NCBI RefSeq assembly: GCF_044704955.1
Contig: NC_091978.1
Coordinates: 319,796,001 to 319,860,000 of the forward strand
Source of the DNA: Pristiophorus japonicus
Lineage: Eukaryota
Length of the DNA: 64,000 bases
Direction of reading: 5' to 3'
The translations under genes were made by a program, and so were the position numbers. The notes under the pieces are model-generated. The model was not told the DNA's origin, ran no database searches, and saw only the letters and a program-made list of their open reading frames with translations. Positions 2,134 through 57,749 of the stretch are shown piece after piece; the first letter of the stretch is position 1, and each line of letters starts with the position of its first letter.

Positions 2134-3257
2134 GATGCCGAATTTGCCCCCAGCTGGGTTGACAGCGCATAATTCGAATGTTTTTTTTCTGCCTGTGCGG
2201 AAAGTGCCGGGACCTGTGCATATTTGGGCTCTTGGAGTTAAAAAAAAACTTGCTGCTGCGGTAACGGAGCGTTCACGTGGCGTTTACAGCGTTGATGACG
2301 TCAGCGCGACGCAGACGTGCCGCGTCATACTGCCGCCTCACAACGTCCCTCCCCTTTTAAATGGGAGGGCCGCTGCAAACTCTGCCGCTCCTTTAGTGCG
2401 CCCACTGGGCCACCAGGCAGAGTGTCGGCCGGGGTGCGGGGCTGCATGTTGGCGGCCCAGCCACACCAGCGGCCGCCATTGTTGGGCCCACTGAAAAGTC
2501 ATCCGACAGAAAAAAGATTTCGGCCGCCGCGCTACCACCTCCCCTTTAAGGGCGGCCAGAGCGCCACAACCACCACAATTTCTCGCATTGAAAAGCTGTT
2601 GTTGGCATTGCCCCACGTCGACCTTTCTCCTTCATGGCAAATGAGCCAAAGGTGGGCAGCGGAAATGTTACAAGGGCACCCTCAAAGCCTCCCTGATAAA
2701 GTGCAACATCCCCACCGACACCTGGGAGTCCCTGGCCAAAGGCCGCCCTAAGTGGAGGAAGTGCATCCGAGAGGGCGCCAAGCACCTCGAGTCTCATCGC
2801 TGAGAACATGCAGAAAACAAGCGCAGGCAGCGGAAAGAGCGTGCGGCAAACCCCCCCCCCCGCCTCCCTTTCCCTCAATGACTATCTGTCCCACCTGTGA
2901 CAGGGACTGTTGTTCTCGTATTGGACTGTTCAGCCACCTAAAGACTCATTTTAAGAGTGGAAGCAAGTCTTCATCGATTCCGAGGGACTGCCTATGATGA
3001 TGACCTCAACCTTGTGTCCCACGGGACAATTTCCCCCGGAGAGCGCAAAGGGATTAGCGCACGGCGATGTCGTCATTGCCGTGTATGCACTATGGTAACG
3101 CACTAATCGCGGAGGGCAGCGCAAACCACATTTGGCCGGTGGAGCCCCGGGGGCAAATCCTCTCGTGCCGCTGCGCCCACACGCAAACTCATTAGCGCAC
3201 CATTAACGCTGGCCGGCGGCGCTAACTGGTACTGCGCAAAGGGGCAATTTCAGCCCC
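2134..3257. mobile_element. Harbinger-type MITE with AAT TSD, carrying an RTE insert
   Basis: Left GATGCCGAATTTGCCCC, right GGGGCAATTTCAGCCCC; AAT at 2131-2133 and 3258-3260. Confidence 0.7.
2590..3003 (+). mobile_element. RTE-clade LINE, 3' fragment
   Basis: Degenerate ORF C-terminus (GGQRK..TLKASL..CNIPTDTWE..; CPTCDRDCCSRIGLFSHLKTH zinc finger) and tail GAGGGACTGCCTATGATGATGA. Confidence 0.85.
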
Positions 3258-9288: not shown

Positions 9289-11070
9289 GTGCTGCTTATA
9301 AATTACTCATGCAAAAGTTTCTATAGGTATGTAAAGAGAAAAAGGTTGGTGAAGACAAACGTAGGTCCCCTGCAGTCAGAATCAGGGGAAGTCATAACGG
9401 GGAACAAAGAAATGGCAGACCAATTGAACAAGTACTTTGGTTCGGTATTCACTAAGGAGGATACAAACAACCTTCCGGATATAAAAGGGGTCAGAGGGTC
9501 TAGTAAGGAGGGGGAACTGAGGGAAATCTTCATTAGTCGGGAAATTGTGTTGGGGAAATTGATGGGATTGAAGGCCGATAAATCCCCAGGGCCTGATGGA
9601 CTGCATCCTAGAGTACTTAAGGAGGTGGCCTTGGAAATAGCGGATGCATTGACAGTCATTTTCCAACATTCCATTGACTCTGGATCAGTTCCTATGGAGT
9701 GGAGGGTAGCCAATGTAACCCCACTTTTTAAAAAAGGAGGGAGAGAGAAAACAGGGAATTATAGACCGGTCAGCCTGACCTCAGTAGTGGGTAAAATGAT
9801 GGAATCAATTATTAAAGATGTCATAGCAGTGCATCTGGAAAATGGTGACATGATAGGTCCAAGTCAGCATGGATTTGTGAAAGGGAAATCATGCTTGACA
9901 AATCTTCTGGAATTTTTTGAGGATGTTTCCAGTAAAGTGGACAAAGGAGAACCAGTTGATGTGGTATATTTGGACTTTCAGAAGGCTTTCGACAAGGTCC
10001 CACACAAGAGATTAATGTGCAAAGTTAAAGCATATGGGATTGGGGGTAGTGTGCTGACGTGGATTGAGAACTGGTTGTCAGACAGGAAGCAAAGAGTAGG
10101 AGTAAACGGGTACTTTTCAGAATGGCAGGCAGTGACTAGTGGAGTGCCGCAAGGTTCTGTGCTGGGGCCCCAGCTGTTTACATTGTACATTAATGATTTA
10201 GACAAGGGGATTAAATGCAGTATCTCCAAATTTGCGGATGATACTAAGTTGGGTGGCAGTGTGAGCTGCGAGGAGGATGCTATTAGGCTGCAGAGTGACT
10301 TGGATAGGTTAGGTGAGTGGGCAAATGCATGGCAGATGAAGTATAATGTGGATAAATGTGAGGTTATCCACTTTGGTGGTAAAAACAGAGAGACAGACTA
10401 TTATCTGAATGGTGACAGATTAGGAAAAGGGATGGTGCAACGAGACCTGGGTGTCATGGTACATCAGTCATTGAAGGTTAGCATGCAGGTACAGCAGGCG
10501 GTTAAGAAAGCAAATGGCATGTTGGCCTTCATAGCGAGGGGATTTGAATACAGGGGCAGGGAGGTGTTGCTACAGTTGTACAGGGCCTTGGTGAGGCCAC
10601 ACCTGGAGTATTGTGTACAGTTTTGGTCTCCTAACTTGAGGAAGGACATTCTTGCTATTGAGGGAGTGCAGCGAAGGTTCACCAGACTGATTCCCGGGAT
10701 GGCGGGACTGACCTATCAAGAAAGATTGGATCAACTGGGCTTGTATTCACTGGAGTTCAGAAGAATGAGAGGGGACCTCATAGAAACGTTTAAAATTCTG
10801 ACGGGTTTAGACAGGTTAGATGCAGAAAGAATGTTCCCAATGTTGGGGAAGTCCAGAACCAGGGGTCACAGTCTGAGGATAAGGGGTAAGCCATTTAGGA
10901 CCGAGATGAGGAGAAACTTCTTCACCCAGAGAGTGGTGAACCTGTGGAATTCTCTACCACAGAAAGTAGTTGAGGCCAATTCACTAAATATATTCAAAAG
11001 GGAGTTAGATGAAGTCCTTACTACTCGGGGGATCAAGGGTTATGGCGAGAAAGCAGGAAGGGGGTACTGA
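9289..11070 (+). CDS. CR1 ORF2 reverse transcriptase (N-terminally truncated, no endonuclease; listed start lies in flanking DNA)
   Basis: KSPGPDG, NYRPVSLTS, QHGF, YLDFQKAFDKV, GVPQGSVLGP, FADD motifs in one 593-aa frame. Confidence 0.9.
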   Translation: MLLINYSCKSFYRYVKRKRLVKTNVGPLQSESGEVITGNKEMADQLNKYFGSVFTKEDTNNLPDIKGVRGSSKEGELREIFISREIVLGKLMGLKADKSPGPDGLHPRVLKEVALEIADALTVIFQHSIDSGSVPMEWRVANVTPLFKKGGREKTGNYRPVSLTSVVGKMMESIIKDVIAVHLENGDMIGPSQHGFVKGKSCLTNLLEFFEDVSSKVDKGEPVDVVYLDFQKAFDKVPHKRLMCKVKAYGIGGSVLTWIENWLSDRKQRVGVNGYFSEWQAVTSGVPQGSVLGPQLFTLYINDLDKGIKCSISKFADDTKLGGSVSCEEDAIRLQSDLDRLGEWANAWQMKYNVDKCEVIHFGGKNRETDYYLNGDRLGKGMVQRDLGVMVHQSLKVSMQVQQAVKKANGMLAFIARGFEYRGREVLLQLYRALVRPHLEYCVQFWSPNLRKDILAIEGVQRRFTRLIPGMAGLTYQERLDQLGLYSLEFRRMRGDLIETFKILTGLDRLDAERMFPMLGKSRTRGHSLRIRGKPFRTEMRRNFFTQRVVNLWNSLPQKVVEANSLNIFKRELDEVLTTRGIKGYGEKAGRGY

Positions 11071-31910: not shown

Positions 31911-32012
31911 TTCAAAACAAAATGTAAGTATCCCGCTGAAGTAAATAAGAAAGCCTCCCAAACCACCGTCTAAAAAGGTATTGCAAAGCAGTTCTGCCAT
32001 TGTCCTCCCAGC

Positions 32013-32168
32013 CAATGTCCCTGTTAATTTTCTTTTGGGTACACGGCCCCTTTAAGGGACTGCACGGTCCATTCACAATACAGCGCATGCATGGTTTTTA
32101 CCATTGAACAGCCAGCTGCGCGGGAGGTCCAGAGCTCTGCGCAACCATGCAGCTTAAAGGGAACATTG
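32013..32168. mobile_element. hAT-type MITE (156 bp)
   Basis: TIRs CAATGTCCCT / AGGGAACATTG; 8-bp TSD CTCCCAGC / CACCCAGC. Confidence 0.75.
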
Positions 32169-32566
32169 CACCCAGCATTTCGCTGAGAGATGTATAACCC
32201 ATCTCTAACTGCAAAAGTATTCCATCCATCTGCACCATTTTCATTGGAAACCCCTCTCTTTCAAACATCAATGAACTCCCTTTGTAGAGGATACTTTGAG
32301 GAAACACCGGCAAATCTGGCACCCTTTCCTTGACAATATACTGCATAATTGCAGTGCATACTACATGACTGATTCAATTTCCTGAAAAAGACTTGACAGA
32401 ATCAATAAGATCCATACTCCCATCTATCACTGGGCACACTAGACCTCCACAGACAGAGGAGAACTCTAGAGCCCACCTTATAATGTTCCCATCTACCTAA
32501 TGATAATTAGAAAAAGGCTGTCTCGAGGGGCACACAGCTGAGTGAGAGGAGGAAGTGAGTGCAAAT

Positions 32567-32934
32567 TTAAAAAAAAAATCATTCCTGAGATGTGGGCATC
32601 GCTGGCAAGGCCAGTATTTAGTGCCCAGCCCTAATTGCCCTTGAGAAGTTAATGGTGAGCTGTCATTTCAGAGGGAAGTTAAGAGACAACCACATTATGG
32701 GTCTGGAGTCACATATTGGCCAGACCGGGTAAGGATGGCAGATTTTCTTCTCTAAAAGACATTAGTGAACCAGATGGGTTTTTACGACAATCCGGCAGTT
32801 TCATGGTCACCATTACTGACACTGGCTTTTCATTCCAGATTTATTTAATTAACTGAATTTAAAATCACCAGCACCATTAGTGTTGGGATTTGAACTCGCG
32901 TCTCTGGATAATTAGTCCAGACCTCTGGATTACT
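32567..32934 (-). mobile_element. tRNA-derived SINE, 3' part (5' end displaced to 39127-39167)
   Basis: B box GAGTTCAAATCC on the minus strand at ~32886-32897; LINE-like tail shared with the 23790 element; breaks at TCTGGATTACT. Confidence 0.75.
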
Positions 32935-33503
32935 CATCATCATAGGCAGTCCCTCGAAACGAGGATGACTTGCTTCCATGCCGAAAGGGGATGTTTCAGT
33001 GAAGGACCTAATATTCTGGATCCAGACCTACATCCTGAAGGGTGGAAGATGCCTGTGCATGGATTTTTTTAACATGTGGTGGCTGTTGCACCCCAGCCAC
33101 CACACGGACTTGACAGAGCTAGGTCTTGGTCCAGTGGCAAGGATTAACCAAGATGACTGGAGACCAGCTCTGCTGCATGGACCTAGTGCACACACATATC
33201 GCACCCAGTGTGGGCTGGCCCGTGCTGCCCCTGAGCCCTCACCTCTTCTGGGCCCCGATCTCATCCCTCTACGAACTCTTGCAGCTCCTTTGCCCCGACC
33301 TCGCCACTCCTGCTGTACCTGCCTGCACTGCAATCAGCCGTCGCCCTCTTGCAGCAGCACGTGCTGCTCCCTTCAGGGGTATGCCACCGCACGCTGCTCC
33401 CTCTAATGATCCAGGCCTGCTGATGGTCTTGCAGGCCGGGACCGCGCCAATTTCTGGGCCTGGCCACCGCATGCTGCTCCCTCTAATGGCCCGGTCTGCT
33501 GAT
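32935..33503 (-). mobile_element. Non-autonomous RTE-related element (RTE 3' tail plus non-coding body)
   Basis: Last ~45 nt match the RTE end at 2955-3003 (TGGAAGCAAGTC..CGAGGGACTGCCTATGATGATG); related copy at 56740-57215. Confidence 0.8.
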
Positions 33504-34544
33504 GACATCCCAGAGTGTGTGCAGCATAAACAGATCAAAGATCAAAGCTCAAATCACCAGGCTCCCAATACAGAAAAGACACACGTTTAATAACCTACAA
33601 CCCCCACCATTACAGTTAAACAGGGTCACAGATGCAGAGCCGTCAGTCAATTGCCATCACCGCGCTGAAAAGCCACCCTCCGCGATTCTCTCTCCAACTC
33701 CTCCCGCTGACTGCGGACTCACGTCTTTGGAGTATCAACGGGACATGGGACGCCACTCAGGCTGGGACGGAGGAGTTTGATGGGGATTCCCCTTTATCAG
33801 AAGTCTTCGCAGGATTGTAACCGCTCTCCTTCCCCGCTTTCTTTTTGTAGGTGACGACAGCCACAATGGCGAGAATGATGAGCAGCGCAGGACCAAGCAC
33901 AACACCAACAATAATAGGGACCTGAGAAACAGGCTTCGTCACATAAAACATGATGACTTTTTCCACCTCAAAGGAGAACCTGCCCTGGTCCTCGGGGTCA
34001 AACTCCGTTCATCTGTTGATCTGATAGGCGCTGTTACGGTTGAGGAAGATCCCACTGGGCAGGGTCTCGTCGAGGAACTTCCCGTCTCTCCGCAGTCACC
34101 TCGATGGCTTGAGGGTAAAACCCGGTGACGACGCAGGACAGGCGTTTAGCATTGCCCGGAAGGGTAAAGGACACGGCGGGGGCAACGGCTCTCAGTTCTC
34201 TCTCTCCAGCCATCAGGTATTTCTTCAACCACTCGATGCAGATCTGCTCCAGGTGAATCTTGTACTGCTGCTGGCCCAGGGCCGTATCCTGGTCCCAGTT
34301 GCGGTTGGTGCTCTCCCCCCAGTATAGCGGGATGACCCCTGCCAAGTGCGCCGTGTCCAAGCTGATGAAATCATTGCCGTCCCAGCAGTACTGATGGAAC
34401 CCGTCGGTGGTGCCGTCATCCCGCAGCTCACAGCCGTACATCGTCTGATAGGTGTGGATCACGGGGGTCTGGTTGGTCTGGGTTAGGAAGGTCTGACTAT
34501 AGATCTTCATTCTCTGCTGCTGGCCCTGCGCGGTCTGTGTGATC

Positions 34545-34775
34545 TGTCATGTATTCAACCAGCATTGTAACCCATGTATAATCTGACCTAAGTTGTACAC
34601 TGTGAGTACAATGACCACTAGGTGGGAGACACTCCTAACCTGGACCTTCAGGTACAAAAGGGGAAGCTCCACCCACCTTCATCACTTGAGTGCTAAGGAA
34701 TAAAGGATAGGTCACAGACTGACCTCTCAAGCATGGGCCTCATGTGCATTTATACTGTATAGTAAGGACCTATCA
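34545..34775 (+). repeat. 5' LTR (231 bp)
   Basis: TGTCATGTATTCAACC...GGACCTATCA, direct repeat of 38407-38640. Confidence 0.95.
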
Positions 34776-37700
34776 ATGGCGAAGAGAAACTGGGATATGA
34801 CCCATGCGAGCATGGCCACTAGCAGAACAGACGAGAGGTACTGTGTTAATGGAATGGTTGGGACAGAGATTCAACATTGTTAAAGCAGCACACAGTTCTC
34901 CAGGCAGACAAGGGCAATCGGGCATGCCCCAGCATGTAGTTGAACCCATAGGGGGAGTTCGACAGAGACAATGGCAAGTTGAACGGCGATTCACGCCATT
35001 GCAAGGGACAATGTGGCCAGTAATGGGGCCATCAACACCTGTTAATGGCGCATTCAAGGACAGTCACGGGGCAGTCAGGGACGATTGACTGGCAAGGGAC
35101 CTTTTGTTTCCAACAACAGCTCATGTTGGAGGCATGGAGGCACACATTCAGCCGGAGTTTGCAGAGATGAACAAAATACCTGCAGAAATTGCAGAAATGC
35201 ACGCTGGGGGAAATCGCTGGAAGCTGAAGTTCAGCGAGTTCATGTGGAGCACGTATACAGTTCATACACCAGGACGCCACCGATAATGATGAAAGTGCTT
35301 CTCAATGGCATCTCGGTATCAATGGAGCTAGACACGGGGGCCAGCCAGTCCCTGATGGGTATCAAACAGTTTGAAATGTTGTGGGCGTCCAAGGCCAGGA
35401 GGCCAAAATTATCGCCGATTGACGCACAGCTACGGACTTACACAAAGCAGATCATTCCGGTGCTAGGCAGCGCCACTGTAGTCGTGACCCACAAAGATTC
35501 GGAGAACAGGTTGCCACTCTGGATTGTCCCAGGGGACGGTCCCACACTACTGGGGAGGAGTTGGCTTGCTGTCATGAACTGGAAATGGGGCGATGTCAAT
35601 GCAATTTCCTCTGTGGAGTGAGTATCATGCTCACAGATCCTGGACAAATTTGACTCATTATTTCAACCCGGCATCAGCACTTTCATGGGGGCCAAGGTAG
35701 TGATTCACATAAACCCGGACGCAAGGCCAGAGCGGTGCCGTACGTGATGTTGGAAAAGATAGAATGCGAATTGGACCACCTGCTGAGGGAAGGCATCATC
35801 TCGCCAGTCGAATTCAGTGACTGGGCGAGCCCGATCGTGCCGGTGCTCAAGGCGGATGAGTTGGTCAGGATATGTGGTGATTACAAGGCCACCATCCAAT
35901 CGGGTGTCACTCCAAGACCAGTACCCGCTACCGAGAGCGGAGGACCTCTTTGCGACGCTATCCGGTGGCAAACTTTTTTCAAAATTGGACCTGACCTCAG
36001 CTTACATGACCCAGGAGCTGGCGAGTGAGTCGAAGAAGCTGACCACCATCACGACACACAAGGGGTTGTCTGAGTACAACAGATGTCCGTTCGGGATTCG
36101 CTCGGCCGCCGCGATCTTCCAATGAAATATGGAAAGCCTCCAAGTCGATTCCAGGGACTGTGGTTTTTCAGCACGACATCCTCATCACGGGTTATGATAC
36201 TGAAGAACACCTCCACAACCTGGAGGAGGTGCTACGCAGACTGGACCGGGTAGGGTTGCGACTGAAAAAGGCGAAGTGCGTCTTCCTAGCTCCAGAGGTA
36301 GAATTCCTGGGGATGAGGGTAGTAGCAGACGGGATCAGCCCTACTGCGTCCAAGACAGAAGCGATCCAGAGAGCACCCAGACCCCGTAACACGACGGAGC
36401 TGCGTTCGTTCCTGAGGCTCCTGAACTATTTTGGTAACTTTCTTCCTAAATTGAGCACGCTGCTAGAGCCGCTACACGTGCTCCTACGCAAAGGTCGCGA
36501 ATGGGTCTGGGGAACTAGGAAAGGGCTTTTAATAGAGCACGCAATTTGTTATATTCCAACACTCTGTTAACACTATACGACCCATGTAAGAAACTTGTGT
36601 TAACATGCGATGCGTCGTCTTATGGTGTCGGGTGTGTGTTGCAGCATGTCAATGTCAAGGGTCAGTTACAGCCGGTAGCTTATGCCTCCAGGAGTCTGTC
36701 CCAGGCAGAAAGGGGTTACGGGATGGTAGAAAAGGAGGCGCTCGCATGTGTATATGCTGTAAAGAAAATGCACCAGTACCTGTTTGGCAGGAAATTTGAG
36801 CTGGAGACAGATCACAAACCCCTAACGTCCCTTTTGGCCGACAACAAGGTCATAAATTCAAATGCATCGGCCCGCATACAGAGGTGGGCACTCACGTTAG
36901 CTGCCTATGACTATACAATTCGGCACAGACCGGGCACCGAAAACTGCGCCAATGCACTCAGCAGGCTCCCACTAGCCACCACTGAAGGGGCTACCGAGCA
37001 TGTTGCTGAGATGGTCATGGCTGTTGCAGCTTTCGGAAGCGAAGGCTCACCCATGACAGCCCATCAGATTAAAGTCTGGACAAATAGAGACCCGCTATTG
37101 TCTCTAGTCAAGAAATGTGTCCTGAATGGGGACTGGGCAGCCACGTACAGGCATGCCCTGAGGAATTTAAACCATTTCACAGGCGCAGGGATGAACTCTC
37201 GATTCAGGCCGATTGCCTACTGTGGGGAAACCGCGTAGTCATGTCCCAGATGGGCAGAGAGGTGTTCATCAGAGAACTCCACAATGAGCACCCGGGTATT
37301 GTCATGATGAAGGCAATTGCCAGGTCACACGTTTGGTGGCCAGGGATAGACGCAGATCTGGAACTTTGTGTTCACAGGTGCAACATGTGTGCCCAGCTGG
37401 GCAATGCGCCCAGGGAAGCCCCCCTTAGGCCCTGGCCATGGCCCGCCGAGCCTTGGTCACGCATCCATGTGGACTACGCAGGCCCTTTCATGGGGAAAAT
37501 GTTTTTGGTTGTAGTAGACGCCTACTCCAAATGGATCGAGTGTGACATTTTAAATTCAAGCACATCCTCTGCCACGGTAGAAAGTCTACGGGCAATGTTC
37601 ACCACCGACGGTCTACCAGACGTCTTGGTCAGCGACAATGGCCCGTGCTTCACAAGCACTGAATTCCAGAACTTCATGGCAGGCAATGGAATTAACCATG

Positions 37701-38406
37701 TCAGAACGGCACCGTTCAAGCCGGCCTCAAACGGCCAGGCAGAACGAGCAGTGCAGATAATCAAACAGGATGCTCAGAATCCAAGGGGGTTCCCTACAAA
37801 GACGCTTATCACGCCTCCTGTTGGCCTATGGATCCTGACCACACTCGCTCACAGGGGTTCCACCCGCAGAGCTGCTAATGAAAAGGATGCTCAAAACCAG
37901 GTTATCCCTTATATACCCCACCATGAAAGGAATTGTCGAGAGCAGGCGCCAGCCACAATATGACTACCATGACAGCGAGGGCGTGATGTATTGATGTAAA
38001 TGATTTTGTTTTTGTCCTCAACTACGCTGCAGGGCCCAAATGGCTCGCAGGCACTGTGATTGCCAAAGAGGGAAATAGGATTCTGGTAGTTAAACTTACC
38101 AATGGACAAATCTGCCGCAAACATGTGGATCAAACAAAAAGGAAGTTCAGCAACCCCATAGAAGAAGCAGAGGAAGAACACGACGTAGAGTTCACTCCAC
38201 TACAGGTGACCAAACACCGGAACCAAAGGGAGGAGAGCCCAATCACTGTGGGCAGTCCGGATAGGCCTGAGGCACCGCAAACAGTAGACACTCAGGCCAG
38301 AGCCCAACAACTGGAGCCCCAAGTCAGGCGCTCTACAAGGGAGCGTAAACCACCAGAGCGACTCAACCTGTGATCCCAATAAGACTTTGGGGGGGGGAGT
38401 TGGTGA

Positions 38407-38640
38407 TGTCATGTATTCAACCAACATTGTAAACCATGTAGAATCTGACCTAAGTTGTACACTGTGAGAACAATGACCACTAGGTGGGAGACACTCCTAA
38501 CCTGGACCTTCAGGTACAAAAGGGGAAGCTCCACGCACCTTCATCACTTGAGTGCTAAGGAATAAAGGGCAGGTCACAGACTGACCTTCTCTCAAGCATG
38601 GGCCTCGTGTGCATTTATACTGTATAGTAAGGACCTATCA
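38407..38640 (+). repeat. 3' LTR (234 bp)
   Basis: About 8 substitutions and one 3-bp indel versus the 5' LTR (manual comparison). Confidence 0.95.
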
Positions 38641-39014
38641 TGATCCATTCCCAGTACTCGGCGTCCTGGCTCTCCTCCATCCACCGCTGCCGCAGAATCG
38701 CCTCCTTCCGATCGCTGTCATAGTGAACAATCTGCGCATCGTTCACATAACCGACCACCACAAACTCCGGCCGTCCGGGATCGAGGTCACTGAGGTAAAG
38801 AAATACCGGAGAGAATGGGAGCCTGCAGTGATCCCTTCACACAGAAGGGCCAACACTATCAGTCCGATCACTGTTGCTTACCTCGACAGACTGGCAGAAG
38901 CAGTTAGTGCACAGTCCTTTTCCAAGCGAACATCTCTTCTCGGTCTGTGAGCTGTGCCTTGTATGGACCGTGTGACTCTTGAGGTCTGCGCTCGGGGTAT
39001 TTTTGTTGTGCCAC

Positions 39015-39110
39015 TACTGATTCGGTGTCGGTGTCTCTCAGTCCATGAGCAGGGCCCTGTGCTGATTCGGTGTCTCTCGGTCCACGAGCAGGGCTGTGTG
39101 CTGATTCTCT
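39015..39110. repeat. ~37-bp tandem repeat (about 2.5 copies) in the 5' leader of the MHC retrocopy
   Basis: CTGATTCGGTGTCTCTC(A/G)GTCCA(T/C)GAGCAGGGC repeated. Confidence 0.7.
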
Positions 39111-39126
39111 GCCCTGTACCCTGCGT

Positions 39127-39167
39127 TCTGGATTACTAGACAAGTAACATAATCACTATGCTACCGT
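39127..39167 (-). mobile_element. 5' end of the tRNA SINE interrupted at 32934
   Basis: TCTGGATTACT duplicated; minus strand reads ACGGTAGCATAGTGATTATGTTAC (A-box-like head). Confidence 0.75.
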
Positions 39168-39291
39168 TATCCTTAGTTACCTGAGGGCATATAATTAAAC
39201 CAAAGGTCGAAATGCACAGAATTTTCTGGAGAATGTCGAATGAAGAAGAAGCTACATTAGCCACCTGATGGGATTCTTTATTCACTTTCTC

Positions 39292-39383
39292 CACACACTA
39301 CAATCTCACACACTACAATCTCACACACTACAATCTCACACACTACAATCTTACACTCTACAATGTTACACTCTACAATCTCA
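39292..39383. repeat. 15-bp minisatellite (CACACACTACAATCT)n, about 6 copies
   Basis: Seen directly. Confidence 0.9.
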
Positions 39384-40419
39384 TCCATCCATCCCCATAG
39401 GTCCTTCAGGGGTATAGTTTTTTGATGGGGATTAGTGGTAACTTTCAGTTTGGCTTCAAAGCAAAATAAACTGGCACAATGCAAAGGTTCTGAGGCTTTA
39501 GAACGTTTGGAGAAGGAGATTACCTGTGGCAACATTTTCTGGTAAATGCTTAATACATGGATAGCCCCAAACCAATCAAGCTAAGCTTGGTGGGGGCATT
39601 TCTGTTGAAGAATGATGACCCTACCTGATAAGTAAACTATGGGACTGAAATTCGGCAAAATCGACTGGCAGCCGCGTTCCGGTCGATTGGCATTTTTGAC
39701 GTTTTTTCGGCGGTGTGGACTTCTGCTGGAAGCCGCCAACTGCCGCTGCGGTATGGGGCTTGCGGCTGTACTGACGTCATCAGGGTGCGCGCCGCTGCTA
39801 CGTGGCCACACCACAAATTCAGCTTTAAAAATGGAGCTTTTTGTTGGACAGTGCCCCCGCCAGCTTTTTGGGTCGGTACACTTTGCTGTGCTACTCGACA
39901 CCGCTGGAGGAGGAGAAGGGAGGATTACCGTGATCGGGTTTTCTGGGTCACAGTTTTTTCTGTTGCTTTGTGTGCATTTGGTTAGCCTGCAGAGTCGCGT
40001 TCATCACTTTTGGGAGAGTTTTGAAGACTTTTAGCTCTCACTGATTAGTGGAGGCCTGTAGGCCTCATTGTGTGCTCCACAGAGGCCTGCTTGTCAGGGT
40101 CCAGCCTTCACACACATTGGGCTCAGTGTTGACAGGGGAACACCTTGTCCACCTTGTCAGACACAGGGCGGCACGCAGGAGAAGGCGGCACTGTCAGCAA
40201 CGTGTAGAGTCGCAGCGGGCAAGGGCGGCAGCAGCCATGGCTGCCCAACATCCAGAAGGGCCTGCAAATGGGCGCAGACCTCCAGGAGGAAGATGGCATG
40301 AGGAAGGAGGGTCAGGTACGCTGACCTCCCCGCACTACATACTGCAGAGGCTCCCGAACATAAGGAGGAACAGGGAGAAGACAATCAGCCAGCTGTCATG
40401 GGAGGTGGCCAGCACAGAC

Positions 40420-42099: not shown

Positions 42100-44127
42100 T
42101 CCAAGGAGCCTGAGGCACTCACCGGGGGCGGCACATTACCACCACCACCAATCTGAGGGAGGTCAGGTTGGTGCTGTGGCGCAACACCGGAAGGTCCCCC
42201 ATGGCCCGTGTTGGACCCAGTCGCGAACGCAACACTGAGGTGTCAGGTGGCATCGAGCTGAGACTACATGAGAGCAGCCAGAGTCGCAAAGCCACCAGAC
42301 ATGGCAGCAGTTTGATGCTCCATGGCCTGTTGCCCAGAGTGCATAAGAGCATTCTGAGCTTCCATCCTCTCCAATCTAACGTCGATGCACTCGTTCCCTC
42401 ATGCCTGTGCTGAAATGGCAGTTGCCACGTCATCTGCATGTTGCGGCCTCACCGATGGATCTGCACGGTCACTCTGGGAGTCCACCATCGCCTGCACACT
42501 GGCAACGATGGGCTCCATGGTGCGCGCAGAGCTGTTGACTATGCGGGAGGCAGACTCCTCCACACTCCTCACCACTTCCGACAGCCTGTCTGGCACCCTT
42601 GTCAGTGCCCCTAATGTCTGGGAATGCATGGGCTCCACCCTTCTTTCGTAAGCCGCAATATTGATGGCATCATCTGAGTCCTCCTCGGTAGAACTCCGGT
42701 GCGGACTTCCCCGCCGGAGAGATGGCACCTGAGGTTGCCTGGCCCTGTCACCATGCTGCAGCCCGCTAGGCCCCTGTGCAACACCCAGTGCAGACCCCTG
42801 TACTAAGTCACTATATCAGACCGCGCGCTCCCAGTATCTGAGCTGGCGCGTGTGGGTGGAAGCAGTGAAGCGTTGGTGCCATTAGTGTCCTCCTCTTCCT
42901 CTTCCTCATCAGTCGCATCCCCAAACGATATAGTGCTTTCGGCACTGTCACCAGGGCTTGACCCCTCAATGTCATCACTGCTGCGACTTGAGATGTCTGC
43001 TGTGATGTGGAGAAGGGTCTCATGCAGGCCTCCAGCTGGTCTGCGAGGTCTCTCCTCACTCCCCACTGTGCTGGGTGTGCTGCCACTCGGTCTCTCATCT
43101 GCAAGCATGAATGGGAGAAGGGCTGCCATGCGGGAGAGGTGGAGCATTGTAAATAGCAGATTGCAAATAGCAGACTTCCAGAAGGAAAGGCACAGCTGGC
43201 ACATTCAGGTAGAGAGCGCATTAAAGGACAGCCTCACTTACCCATGGTGCCTACATCGGGATCGCCAGTACCACAGGCTAAGGGGGGGCGTCTCATCTGC
43301 AAGCATAAATGGGAGAAGGGCTGCCGTGAGGGGAAGTGGGGAATTATTGCATGGAGGCTGCAACTAGCAGACTTCCAGAAGGAAGGGCACAGTAGGCGCT
43401 GGCGCATTCAAGGAGAAAGCGCATTAAAGGAGGGCCTTCACTTATCCACATCACTGTCAGCAGTAAGTACCCTGGCCCACGGGGAAGGTACCATGTCCGT
43501 CCACGAGCGCTTCAACCCTCTCCTCCAAGGGTGTGAGGACCTGGATGCCTGCCTTACCACCACCAATCCTCCTTTGCTCCATTCTATTGTGAGCCAGTTT
43601 GGCCTGCAAAACAAAGAATGGTTGTTGAGTACCACTGTGATGACACATCAGAAATGAGTGCACAAGTGTATGTCCCTGACATGCAGCTGTAGGTGTGAGA
43701 TGAAAGGGAGCCTCCATTGCGAGAACACGCACACACATATATATCTATATTATATAATATAATATATATAGAGGCGTCAACAATGAAATGCTGCTTCAGT
43801 GACTAAACAGTGAGGATGGGAAATAAGAGAATGTTGAAGGAGGGGCTCGTAGATGCAAGGTCAGCAGTTGGTGGAACAGGTATTCACTTTCATAACACGG
43901 ATGATATCATTCAAGCGTTTTCTGCACTGCGCCAGAGTCCTGTTATGAATGGAGGTGCCTGAAACCTCCCCTGCAATCTCATTCCATGCATTGCTTAAGA
44001 CCTCACGAGTTGGTCTCCCCACGTCGGGATAAATCAGTCTCCTCCTGCCCTCGACACCCTGCATGAGGGTCTCCAGCTCTGCGTCAGTAAAGCAGCTTGC
44101 CCTCCTTGGTCCACGAGCACCAGCCAT
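42100..44127 (-). pseudogene. Harbinger Myb/SANT-like DNA-binding partner gene (NAIF1-like), spliced; 3' end approximate
   Basis: Exon 1 44127-43888 (RASCFTDAELETL..AWNEIAGEV..RTLAQCRKRLNDI) with GT donor; exon 2 from 43603 (AKLAHNRMEQRRIGGG..LTPLEE) after a CAG acceptor; acidic low-complexity downstream exon. Confidence 0.8.
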
Positions 44128-54715: not shown

Positions 54716-56530
54716 CATAGAAACATAGAAAATAGGTGCAAGAGTAGGCCATACGGCCCTTCGAGCCTGCACCACCATTCAATATGATCATGGCTGATCA
54801 TGCACCTTCAGTATCCCATTCCTGCTTCCTCTCCATATCCTTTGATCCCTTTAGCCGTAAGGGCCACATCTAACTCCATTTTGAATATATCTAACTAATT
54901 GGCCTCAACAACTTTCTGTGGTAAAGAATTCCACAGGTTCACAATTTTCTGAGTGAAGAAGTTTCTCCTCATCTCGGTCCTAAATGGCTTACCCCTTATC
55001 CTTAGACTGTGACCCCTGGTTCTGGACTTCCCCAACAATGGGAACATTCTTCCTGCATCAAACCTGTCCAATCCCATCAGAATTTTATATGTTCCTATGA
55101 GATCTCCTCTCATTCTTCTAAATTCCAGTGAATATAAGCCTAGTTGATCCAGTCTTTCTTCATATGTCAGTCCTGCCGTCCCGGAAATCAGTCTGGTGAA
55201 CCTTCGCTGCACTCCCTCAATAGCAAGAATGTCTTTCCTCAGATGAGGAGACCAAAACTGTACACAATATTCAAGGTATGGCCCCACCAAGGCCCTGTAC
55301 AACTGCAATGAGACCTCCCTGATCCTATACTCAAATCCTCTCGTTATGAAGGCCAACATGTCATTTGCCTCCTTCACCGCCTGCTGTACCTGCATGCCAA
55401 CTTTCAATGACTGATGTACCATGACAACCAGGTCTTGTTGCACCTCCCCTTTTCCTAATCTGTCACCATTCAGATAATATTCTGCCTCTCTGTTTTTGCC
55501 ACCAAAGTGGATAACCTCACATTTATCTACATTATACTGCATCTGCCATGCATTTGCCCACTCACCTAACCTGTCCAAGTCACCCTGCAGCCTCTTAGCA
55601 TCCTCCTCACAGCTCACACTGCCATCGAGCTTAGTGTCATTTGCAAACTTGGAGATATTACATTCAATTCCTTCGTCCAAATCATTAATGTATATTGTAA
55701 ATAGCTGGGGGCCCAGCACTGAACCTTGCGGTACCCCACTAGTCACTGCCTGCCATTCTGAAAAGGACCCATTTATTCCTACTCTTTGCTTTCTGTCTGC
55801 CAACCAGTTCTCTATCCACGTCAATACATTACCCCCAATACCATGTGCTTTATTTTTGCGCACTAATCTCTTGTGTGGGACCTTGTCAAAAGCCTTTTGA
55901 AAGTCCAAATATACCACATCCACTGGTTCTCCCTTGTCCACTCTACTAATCACATCCTCAAAAAATTCTAGAAGATTTGTCAAGCATGATTTCCCTTTCA
56001 TAAATCCATGCTGACTTGGTCCGATCCTGTCACTGCTTTCCAAATGCGCTGTTATTACGCCTTTAATAATTGATTCCAACATTTTCCCCACTACCAATGT
56101 CAGGCTAACCGGTCTATAATTCCCTGTTTTCTCTCTCCCTCCTTTTTTAAAAAGTGGTGTTACATTAGCTACCCTCCAATCCATAGGAACTGATCCAGAA
56201 TCTATAGAATGTTGGAAAATGACCACCAATGCATCCACTATTTCGAGGGCCACTTCCTTAAGTACTCTGGGATGCAGCCTATCAGACCCTGGAGATTTAT
56301 CGGCCTTCAATCCCATTAATTTCCCTAACACAATTTCCTGACTAATAAGGATTTCCTTCAGTTCTTCCTTCTCGCTAGACCCTCGGTCCCCTAGTATTTC
56401 CGGAAGGTTATTTGTGTTTTCCTCTGTGAAAACAGAACCAAAGTATTTGCTCAATTGGTCTGCCATTTCTTTGTTCCCCATTATAAATTCACCTGATTCT
56501 GACTGCAAGGGATCTACATTTGTCTTCACT
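54716..56530 (-). mobile_element. Young 5'-truncated CR1 (544-aa ORF2 RT fragment at 54895-56529)
   Basis: Same subfamily as 9309-11165; catalytic FADD changed to FAND; premature stop at 54895. Confidence 0.95.
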
Positions 56531-56739: not shown

Positions 56740-57215
56740 GTCGTAGTATAAGGCAGTCCCTCGTATCGAGGATGACCTGTTTCCACACCCAAAAGGGATG
56801 AGTTCACAGGTGTTTCAATGAGGGACCTGATATTCCAGGTCCCGAACTACATGTTGAAGGATGGAAGATGCCCGTGCGTGGATTCTTTTAACGTGGGGTG
56901 GCTGTTGCACACCAGCCACCACACAGGCTTGACATAGCTAAGTCTTGATCCAGTGGCAAGGGTTAACCAAAACGACTGGAGACCAGACTCTGCTGCACGG
57001 ACCTAGTGCACACATATGCTCCTACCATCCGTAGATCGAAATGTGGGCTGGCCCGTGCTGCCCCTGGGCCCTCGCCTCTTCTGGGCCCCGAACCCTCGTC
57101 TCTCCTGGACATGGATCACGTCGCTCCTGGGCCACGATCTCTCGCCGCACCTCCGCCACGATCTCTCGCCGCTCCTCCGCCCCGATCATTCGCCGCACCT
57201 CCGCCACGATTTCTC
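56740..57215 (-). mobile_element. Non-autonomous RTE-related element, second copy, with ~21-bp GC-rich tandem repeats at its 5' side
   Basis: Colinear with 32935-33300; (CCACGATCTCTCGCCGCACCTCCG)-like repeats at 57130-57215. Confidence 0.8.
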
Positions 57216-57749
57216 GCATAGTGACGCAGAGCCAAGATTTCATGTTGACTATCTTAATGTGGCTTTGCTAATGCTGATATTATATTGCTGTACACATCTC
57301 CTCGATCAAAATGTTCTTCTATCACCATTGCGCATCATGTATTGGATACACATATAGTCATGTGTGCAGTGGGGTACAGGTAGTGTTCCAAATTTGTGGG
57401 TGTCACCAATGTTATGCATAAATGATAAGTGCAGACACATATCACAGTCAAGGATTAAAACTCGTGTCAGTCGACAAGCAGTAACCTTGATGTGTCACAA
57501 CATGCAAGGAATAAATACTGGGGCATTTTGTCAGCTCTTCAACAACTACTCGGCCACTGCCAGACTACCACCTTGTGGCGACCTTGTTCCTGCTGGTGCA
57601 GAGCACAACATTACTGTTCCAACAGATTTATACTCAGATTATAATGCAGTATCTACAATCATCAAGATCTAAATGTGATACTGAAAAGTCAGATATCACA
57701 GTGTTAGTGTTGATTTATATTTATATGATTATTTTGTGTCATATTTTTT

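What the first reader, a model, noticed from the sequence alone, without database searches (positions are those of the whole stretch)
32924..39137. MHC class I mRNA apparently retroposed by RTE machinery as a chimera with an RTE-type element
Seen: a tRNA SINE is cut at TCTGGATTACT (32924-32934) and resumes after an identical 11-mer at 39127-39137. Everything between is therefore one insertion, about 2.1 kb once the later Gypsy is removed. On the minus strand it reads: ~255-nt leader, intronless MHC class I CDS, ~250 nt of 3' sequence, ~570-bp RTE-related element, (TGA)n tail. There is no poly(A). Known: RTE/CR1/L2 RTs are generally thought to recognise their own 3' tails, and vertebrate retrogenes are mostly L1 products with poly(A). 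Inference: an MHC transcript acquired an RTE tail (read-through into a downstream element, or template switching) and was copied. This is a poly(A)-independent route to dispersing immune genes and could help explain intron-poor class I genes.
Basis: partly seen in the sequence, partly recalled or inferred. Interest (0 to 1): 0.85.

Follow-up and report, generated by a model that had tools for sequence, protein, structure and literature searches.

The report
Dead MHC-I retrocopy with LINE tail
A broken, intron-free copy of a shark MHC class I messenger RNA, fused at its 3' end to a very abundant jumping-gene-dependent repeat instead of a poly(A) tail, was pasted in one step into another repeat, which shows how non-L1 jumping genes can scatter immune-gene copies in this genome.

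Summary
TCTGGATTACT occurs only at 32924 and 39127. Without a later Ty3/Gypsy element (34545-38640, own 5-bp TSD TGATC) the insert is 2091 bp. On the minus strand it reads: 255-nt leader, intronless MHC class I CDS, about 260 nt of 3'UTR, a 561-bp repeat, then GGACTGCCT(ATG)3. There is no poly(A).

Public contigs of the same species show that the repeat is very high-copy. More than 1200 copies break off exactly at 32934/32935, so the TSD abuts the family's true 3' end. The last 45-50 nt are shared with a LINE 3' fragment (2600-3005) whose ORF stops inside the (TGA)n tail.

One target-primed reverse transcription of a chimeric MHC/repeat RNA by a tail-specific (stringent) LINE is the best reading. 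RTE clade is plausible but not shown. Read-through against template switching stays open.

The copy is dead: lost start codon, two frameshifts, a stop, an 18-nt deletion, and the Gypsy. It sits in a clade made only of Pristiophorus japonicus MHC-I proteins.

The scan has noted similar "MHC cDNA + RTE-tailed" copies, and intact intronless MHC-I genes, on other pieces of this genome. I could not check those notes.

The parts
39127..39137 (.). Target-site duplication, copy next to the 5' end of the retrocopy (TCTGGATTACT on +)
   Evidence: Only two occurrences in the window, 0.04 expected; the flanking bases differ, so it is exactly 11 bp
38872..39126 (-). 255-nt leader upstream of the former start codon. 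It includes a 39-nt tandem duplication (39028-39107) with CCAAT-like CCGAATCAG motifs and an A-rich CAAAAATA
   Evidence: It is unusually long for an MHC-I 5'UTR. Whether it holds promoter sequence is inference only
38646..38871 (-). MHC class I CDS part 1: signal peptide and most of alpha1. The start codon is now GTG (38871-38869) and there is a -1 frameshift near 38770
   Evidence: Pfam MHC_I 9.1e-10 on 38642-38770; tblastn to P. japonicus P0191/P0174, which start MIGLIVL; frames
34545..38640 (+). Later Ty3/Gypsy-type LTR retrotransposon with broken ORFs. LTRs at 34545-34775 and 38407-38640; 5-bp TSD TGATC at 34540-34544 and 38641-38645
   Evidence: LTR divergence 3.5%.
33757..34544 (-). MHC class I CDS part 2: end of alpha1, alpha2, alpha3, TM, cytoplasmic tail and stop codon. 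Lesions: 2-nt deletion at 34093, TGG>TGA at 34011-34009, 18-nt deletion at 33961
   Evidence: Pfam MHC_I 6.6e-17 and C1-set; 6lup_A 6.6e-43; related contigs carry the extra AG at 34093 and 18 extra nt at 33961 (table 4)
33496..33756 (-). 3'UTR of the MHC transcript. It is low-copy (at least 10 other genomic contigs) and has an ATTAAA at 33591-33586
   Evidence: Depth is 107-140 here against about 10 for single copy and above 10^4 to the left. The C-termini of the P. japonicus models P0190 and P0196 are translations of this stretch
32935..33495 (-). High-copy non-autonomous repeat fused to the 3'UTR. The core 32935-33262 is the most abundant part; 33262-33495 is GC-rich, repeat-bearing and less abundant
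   Evidence: Summed contig depth up to 2.35 million. A second copy lies at 56751-57091 at 80% identity. No Rfam head was found
32935..32990 (-). LINE-type 3' tail: a small hairpin (CCUCG-UUU-CGAGG inside GCA.GUC/GAC.UGC) followed by CCU(AUG)3
   Evidence: The tail is shared with the LINE fragment at 2958-3005 and with copy 2. The fold is -16.5 kcal/mol with z only -1.3. 1228 contigs of X1 diverge exactly before 32934
32924..32934 (.). Target-site duplication, copy directly after the (ATG)3 tail
32560..32923 (-). Host repeat (shark tRNA-headed SINE-like element), the part 3' of the insertion; B-box-like GAGTTCAAATCC at about 32888-32899. Its head continues at 39138-39175
   Evidence: Continuity rests on box order and on a consensus recalled from memory, not on a tool result
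2600..3005 (+). 5'-truncated LINE 3' fragment with the same tail. The ORF ends ...CPTCDRDCCSRIGLFSHLKTHFKSGSKSSSIPRDCL and stops in TGATGATGA
56751..57091 (-). Second copy of the tail repeat, with 24-nt tandem repeats upstream at 57100-57230; its ATG repeats have decayed

Best explanation
A spliced MHC class I transcript of the sawshark was physically joined at its 3' end to a copy of a very abundant non-autonomous repeat. The transcript ran from a 255-nt leader through the whole coding sequence and about 260 nt of 3'UTR. The last ~50 nt of the repeat, plus its (AUG)n repeats, are the recognition tail of an autonomous LINE. That LINE's reverse transcriptase bound the tail, nicked the tRNA-like head of a resident SINE, and copied the whole chimeric RNA by target-primed reverse transcription. 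The result was a 2.09-kb insert flanked by an 11-bp duplication and lacking poly(A). The copy then decayed, and a Ty3/Gypsy element later landed in its alpha1 region.

Shown here: the anatomy, the TSD, the family terminus at the TSD, tail sharing with a LINE fragment, absence of introns, the lesions, and the nesting order.

Inferred: that the LINE enzyme recognised the tail (by analogy with stringent-type LINEs), and that the fusion already existed in the RNA. I put the second point at about 60:40 for a pre-existing fusion (the repeat sitting in or behind the 3'UTR of a source gene, or a chimera that was itself re-copied) against a template switch during this very event.
For: - The 11-bp TSD is unique in the window.
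- The left TSD copy touches the (ATG)3 end. That position is the terminus of the repeat family in 1228 (X1), 95 (X5) and 67 (X7) contigs with unrelated flanks (table 7).
- No second TSD or A-run lies at the 3'UTR/repeat junction.
- The same tail sits on a LINE fragment whose ORF stops in the tail.
- The CDS is colinear with full-length shark MHC-I proteins across all exon borders.
- The Gypsy is nested with its own TSD.

For a pre-existing or recurrent fusion:
- A different genomic contig (X1 record 1, 227 nt, 87% identical, about single-copy depth) spans 33298-33524 across the junction.
- At least 10 other genomic contigs carry the 3'UTR and cytoplasmic-tail end, but only 1-4 carry alpha2-alpha3. 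This 3'-anchored gradient is what repeated 5'-truncating retroposition would give (tables 2, 3, 8).
- The tree places this copy in a 100/98 clade of only P. japonicus sequences, several of which look like fragments of such copies.
Against: - The fusion in a source transcript is therefore not seen directly.
X5 record 14 stops matching at 33496. At least some family members thus lack this repeat at that position.
- X1 record 1 has only 29-73 nt on the low-copy side, depending on where the repeat starts.
- The tail hairpin is not better than shuffles.
- SINE continuity was not tested against a consensus.
Confidence: 0.75

Rival explanations
1. One-off template switch. The LINE enzyme started on an ordinary RNA of the tail repeat. 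At or near its 5' end it jumped onto an internal site of the 3'UTR of a normal MHC class I mRNA, so the chimera was created during this insertion only.
For: Expressed relatives seem to continue past the junction with sequence unlike our repeat (X7 records 27 and 28, X5 record 14). The only poly(A) signal lies about 90 nt upstream of the junction, so the junction is not a normal mRNA end. Template switching by stringent LINE enzymes is the accepted route to chimeric SINEs (PMC5729268).
Against: Another genomic contig seems to share the same junction (X1 record 1). Unchecked scan notes report several MHC cDNA + RTE-tailed copies elsewhere, with other TSDs. Independent switches should give different junctions.
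Confidence: 0.2
2. Two separate insertions that only look like one. Either the repeat entered the SINE first and the MHC retrocopy later landed exactly at its 5' edge, or the reverse order.
For: Nested insertions are common here: a Gypsy sits in the retrocopy and the retrocopy sits in a SINE.
Against: The 11-mer occurs only at the outer borders. No direct repeat, A-run or second tail marks the inner junction. The MHC part would have no 3' priming signal of its own.
Confidence: 0.04
3. DNA-level event. A pre-existing chimeric segment was copied into a break in the SINE by repair or segmental duplication, and the 11-mer is microhomology.
For: The scan notes one MHC fragment inside a DNA transposon that was explained by break repair (s1-874478, unchecked).
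Against: The insert ends precisely at the retroposon family's 3' terminus. It is flanked by a clean 11-bp duplication of the size usual for LINE insertions.
Confidence: 0.03

Closest known systems
L1-made processed pseudogenes and retrogenes of mammals
   Same: [quoted passage not shown]
   Different: There is no poly(A). The 3' end is a specific LINE tail with (ATG)n, so the template was chosen by a tail sequence and not by poly(A) (relaxed versus stringent recognition, PMC3747384).
SINE/LINE tail sharing in stringent-type LINEs (for example UnaL2/UnaSINE1 of eel and the zebrafish L2 elements; PMC4176376, PMC3747384)
   Same: About 50 nt of shared 3' tail with a small stem-loop and short terminal repeats. 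Any RNA that carries the tail can be mobilised in trans.
   Different: The passenger here is a pol II, spliced, protein-coding mRNA of about 1.5 kb joined to a whole non-autonomous element, not a small pol III RNA head.
Chimeric retrocopies made by template switching (U6/L1 chimeras; the PittSINE origin model, PMC5729268)
   Same: Two unrelated RNAs in one insert, inside one TSD, with the LINE-recognised part at the 3' end.
   Different: The junction appears to recur in another genomic copy, which points to a stable fused template and not to a single switch. This is not settled.
RTE-clade LINEs and their non-autonomous derivatives (Bov-B/Bov-A2, MAR4, RTE1-N1; PMC3747384, PMC6007223, PMC1291365)
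   Same: Almost no 3'UTR, an ORF running into a trinucleotide microsatellite tail, and abundant internally deleted or SINE-like dependants.
   Different: Clade membership is untested because no RT sequence was available. The ORF end carries a C2H2-like motif (C-x2-C-x12-H-x3-H) that I cannot assign to RTE from the data in hand.
Shark classical-type MHC class I (UAA-like; solved structure 6lup)
   Same: Signal peptide, alpha1-alpha3, TM and cytoplasmic tail; best PDB match 6lup_A.
   Different: Intronless and disabled. It belongs to a sawshark-only clade whose annotated members are partly fragmentary.

Membership tests
MHC class I heavy chain | alpha1/alpha2 peptide-binding domains (Pfam MHC_I) followed by an Ig C1-set alpha3, TM and tail | tested here: met
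   MHC_I 6.6e-17 and 9.1e-10, C1-set 8e-4 (just under the cut-off on a frameshifted piece); 6lup_A 6.6e-43; colinear tblastn to shark MHC-I
MHC class I heavy chain | Intact reading frame, that is, a working gene | tested here: not met
   ATG>GTG start, -1 frameshift near 38770, 2-nt deletion at 34093, TGA at 34011-09, 18-nt deletion at 33961, and a Gypsy in alpha1
Processed retrocopy made by target-primed reverse transcription | All introns absent | tested here: met
   Single HSPs cross the exon borders; reading
Processed retrocopy made by target-primed reverse transcription | Target-site duplication at the exact ends of the insert | tested here: met
   The 11-mer occurs twice against 0.04 expected. 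Its left copy abuts the family terminus
Processed retrocopy made by target-primed reverse transcription | Empty site in a related genome or an intact host-repeat consensus | tested here: inconclusive
   No other SINE head in the window. ARAGORN on the joined head is non-specific: 10 of 200 shuffles and 19 hits in the window. No other genome was reachable
Stringent-type LINE-dependent (tail-sharing) element | 3' tail shared with an autonomous LINE of the same genome | tested here: met
   The last 45-50 nt plus ATGATGATGA are shared with the LINE fragment at 2958-3005, whose ORF precedes the tail
Stringent-type LINE-dependent (tail-sharing) element | Conserved stem-loop just before the terminal repeats | tested here: inconclusive
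   A hairpin is predicted in ours and in copy 2, with a loop change that keeps the stem. The z-scores are only -1.3 and -1.7, and the LINE copy is no better than shuffles
RTE clade of LINEs | Placement by reverse-transcriptase phylogeny; a single ORF with endonuclease + RT | not testable with these tools
   Only about 400 nt of the LINE 3' end is in the window. The RT-bearing LINEs here are CR1 with ...TTTCTATGTTTCTATGT tails
RTE clade of LINEs | Very short 3'UTR made of trimer-to-pentamer repeats | tested here: met
   The ORF stops at the TGA of the TGATGATGA tail. The criterion is quoted from PMC1291365 and the tail table from PMC6007223
Ty3/Gypsy LTR retrotransposon (the nested element) | LTRs TG..CA, PBS, PPT, short TSD, pol order RT-RNaseH-integrase | tested here: met

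The most novel reading that the evidence does not exclude
The MHC class I cDNA fused to the LINE-tailed repeat is not a single accident. It is a transcribed, repeatedly re-copied unit, in effect a protein-coding passenger turned into a LINE-dependent retroposon. It has seeded a sawshark-specific family of intronless MHC class I copies, including the intact ones that the scan noted in an IFIT cluster. This would be a poly(A)-independent route by which stringent LINEs duplicate and disperse a functional immune gene.
Probability: 0.3. Interest if true: 0.8.

Novelty: new variant of a known kind. Interest (0 to 1): 0.58.

Why it matters
Genomes ruled by tail-specific LINEs (CR1, L2, RTE) are thought to make few retrogenes, because ordinary mRNAs lack the tail. 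This locus is a clean natural case of the way round that limit. The mRNA borrowed a tail by being fused to a LINE-dependent repeat. The case has an unambiguous TSD, an exact family terminus and a datable nesting order.

The gene is an MHC class I gene, and related copies, some reported intact, exist in the same genome. That makes a concrete question testable: did retroposition through LINE tails build a lineage of intronless antigen-presenting genes in a shark? This particular copy is a pseudogene with no function of its own.

Tried and rejected
- ARAGORN on the joined SINE head. It gave a hit only at the relaxed threshold, which also fires on 5% of shuffles and 19 times in the window. I rejected it as evidence.
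- Search for other copies of the SINE head in the window: none.
- Rfam on 32000-40000: no small-RNA head for the tail repeat.
- TSD search for the LINE fragment and for repeat copy 2: nothing usable.
- Protein search with the ORF 33126-33587(+), which spans the 3'UTR/repeat junction, hoping for ORFs called on other chimeric copies: blank.
- Findings search by sequence: blank.
- Literature: no paper on intronless shark MHC class I or on the sawshark genome's repeats.
- Considered and rejected: that the tail belongs to the CR1 elements of this window (different tail), and that ATTAAA at 33591 marks the mRNA end at the junction (about 90 nt too far upstream, and RNA contigs run past it).


Full report
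OBSERVATION

The 11-mer TCTGGATTACT is present only at 32924-32934 and 39127-39137. Chance expects 0.04 matches, and no shuffle gave two. The bases just outside the two copies differ, so the duplication is exactly 11 bp. The window has no N.

Inside the interval lies a Ty3/Gypsy-type LTR element.
- Its LTRs are at 34545-34775 and 38407-38640, run TG..CA, and differ at 8 of 231 sites.
- A primer-binding site follows the 5' LTR and a purine run precedes the 3' LTR.
- It has a 5-bp duplication TGATC.
- Its broken ORFs carry RVT_1, RT_RNaseH, Integrase_H2C2 and rve, in that order.

I only describe this element. Nothing was merged or repaired.

ANATOMY WITHOUT THE GYPSY

The insert is 2091 bp, read on the minus strand.
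- Leader, 39126-38872. It is 255 nt long and holds a 39-nt tandem duplication.
- CDS, 38871-38646 and 34544-33760, with the stop at 33759-33757.
- 3'UTR, 33756 to about 33496.
- Repeat, 33495-32935, ending GAGGGACTGCCT ATGATGATG. The second 11-mer follows directly.
- There is no poly(A). The only poly(A) signal is an ATTAAA about 90 nt before the UTR/repeat junction.

The coding part is MHC class I. Pfam gives MHC_I at 6.6e-17 and 9.1e-10, and the best solved structure is 6lup_A at 6.6e-43. Full-length shark MHC-I proteins align across all domain borders without interruption, so the copy is processed.

The copy is dead.
- The start codon is now GTG.
- There is a -1 frameshift near 38770.
- There is a 2-nt deletion at 34093. 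Related contigs keep AG there.
- TGG has become TGA at 34011-34009.
- There is an 18-nt deletion at 33961. A related contig keeps those 18 nt.
- The Gypsy sits in alpha1.

WHAT THE 3' ELEMENT IS

I laid contigs of four public runs of the same organism on 32700-34544 at 85% identity or more.

Summed depth in the DNA run X1 changes sharply along the stretch:

| Interval | Summed depth (X1) |
|---|---|
| 32948-33257 | 0.8-2.35 million |
| 33258-33443 | 70-190 thousand |
| 33444-33505 | 17 thousand |
| 3'UTR | 107-140 |
| CDS (33816-34544) | 2-70 |
| Contigs identical to this locus | about 10-12 |

In X1, 1228 contigs stop matching exactly before 32934 and continue with unrelated flanks (95 in X5 and 67 in X7). 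So 32935 is the true 3' terminus of the family, and the TSD touches it. This is the geometry expected of target-primed reverse transcription.

Two relatives lie in the window.
- The core of the repeat recurs at 56751-57091 at 80% identity.
- Its last 45-50 nt plus ATGATGATGA recur at 2958-3005. There they end a 5'-truncated LINE whose ORF (...CPTCDRDCCSRIGLFSHLKTHFKSGSKSSSIPRDCL) stops in the TGATGATGA tail itself.

That is the SINE/LINE tail-sharing pattern of stringent-type LINEs (PMC3747384, PMC4176376). A small hairpin precedes the repeats, but it is not statistically distinctive. No small-RNA head was found for the repeat.

WHICH LINE

The two RT-bearing LINEs in the window are CR1, with the usual ...TTTCTATGTTTCTATGT ends, so they are not the partner. 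The partner's near-absent 3'UTR and trinucleotide tail match the RTE hallmark quoted in PMC1291365 and the tail list in PMC6007223. No RT of this family could be examined. I call RTE plausible (about 55-60%) but unproven.

ONE EVENT OR TWO

The 11-mer is absent from the inner junction. No direct repeat, A-run or second tail lies there. A single retroposition of a chimeric RNA is the economical reading.

The nesting order is: host SINE, then the MHC/repeat chimera, then the Gypsy. The Gypsy's LTRs already differ by 3.5%, so the chimera is not young.

HOW THE CHIMERA AROSE

This is not settled.

For a fusion that existed before this insertion:
- A different genomic contig spans 33298-33524 across the junction (X1 record 1, 87% identical, near single-copy depth).
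- At least 10 other genomic contigs carry the 3'UTR and tail end, against 1-4 for alpha2-alpha3. This 3'-anchored gradient is what repeated 5'-truncating retroposition would give. Faster divergence of the alpha domains could mimic it.

For a template switch, or a repeat insertion private to one source gene:
- Expressed relatives run 160-253 letters past 33539 without being laid on our repeat (X7 records 27 and 28).
- X5 record 14 stops matching at 33496.

The loose end at 33539 itself is only a 7-nt duplication in our copy. The next 30 letters are still homologous (table 7).

A protein search with a junction-spanning ORF was blank.

FAMILY CONTEXT

The closest database proteins are UniRef entries of Pristiophorus japonicus.

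For the tree I read the broken gene through with X at each break. This was done only inside a local script, and the joined sequence was sent to no search tool. In that tree the copy falls in a 100/98 clade made only of P. japonicus entries (P0006, P0190, P0195, P0196). Several of these look like fragments or read-throughs of similar copies. The C-termini of P0190 and P0196 are translations of our 3'UTR, and the N-terminus of P0006 is an out-of-frame alpha1.

The scan's own notes report similar things on other pieces of this genome. I could not check them.
- Further "MHC cDNA + RTE-tailed element" copies with other TSDs: s1-878004, s1-877592, s1-876557, s1-878029.
- CR1-tailed copies: s1-878643, s1-874724.
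- Intact intronless MHC-I genes in an IFIT cluster.

So the scan has met this kind of thing before on other DNA. An inverted copy, as in s1-877535, may be what the two-piece contigs X5 record 13 and X7 record 29 show.

HOST SINE

The host repeat lies on the minus strand. An A-box-like TAGCATAGTGA is right of the insert and a B-box-like GAGTTCAAATCC is left of it, so the insertion hit its tRNA-like head.

I could not test colinearity against a consensus with tools. The joined sequence agrees, without indel, with the consensus of this widespread shark repeat as I recall it. That is a lead from memory, not a result.

VERDICT

It is unproven on the clade and on the origin of the fusion.

This is a new variant of a known kind (tail-borrowing retrocopy formation) and not a new mechanism. 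Its value is as a clean exemplar and as an entry point to the sawshark's intronless MHC-I family.

Noticed in passing
window 38872-39126 (minus strand): The 255-nt leader is long for an MHC-I 5'UTR. It holds three CCAAT-like CCGAATCAG/GAGAATCAG motifs (two of them in a 39-nt tandem duplication), an A-rich CAAAAATA, and a consensus-looking 5' splice site GAG|GTAAGC 13 nt before the former start codon. The template RNA may have started upstream of the normal promoter.
   Followed up: no
window 9289-11070 (+) and 54895-56529 (-): Two CR1-type LINE copies with long RT ORFs (RVT_1 1e-33 and 9.5e-31). Their nearly identical 3' ends finish in TTTCTATGTTTCTATGT, a tail family different from the one on the MHC retrocopy.
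   Followed up: partly
window 2600-3005 (+): The LINE 3' fragment has a C-terminal motif ...KRYKGTLKASL..WESLAKGRPKWRK.. followed by a C2H2-like finger (C-x2-C-x12-H-x3-H). Its stop codons are formed by the (TGA)n tail. The clade is unresolved.
   Followed up: partly
window 57100-57230 (minus strand): About 24-nt GC-rich tandem repeats (GAGATCGTGGCGGAGGTGCGGCGA-like) lie directly 5' of the second copy of the tail repeat. Our copy has a different repeat-bearing GC-rich 5' part (a 37-nt motif twice, 80 nt apart, at 33372-33488).
   Followed up: no
window 39292-39383: A 15-nt tandem repeat (CACACACTACAATCT, 6 copies) sits about 120 nt beyond the SINE head.
   Followed up: no
proteins P0190, P0195, P0196, P0006 (P. 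japonicus, UniRef): Annotated sawshark 'MR1-like' gene models look like partial or read-through translations of MHC-I retrocopies. P0196 lacks alpha2, and its N-terminus matches a non-MHC stretch of this window (43493-43597). P0190 and P0196 end in translated 3'UTR.
   Followed up: partly
runs X5-X7 on window 33506-34544: Contigs 85% or more similar to this MHC lineage reach very high depth in run X6 (up to about 78,000), so close relatives of this dead copy are strongly represented there. The library type of these runs is not on record. RNA is my guess from the uneven depth.
   Followed up: no
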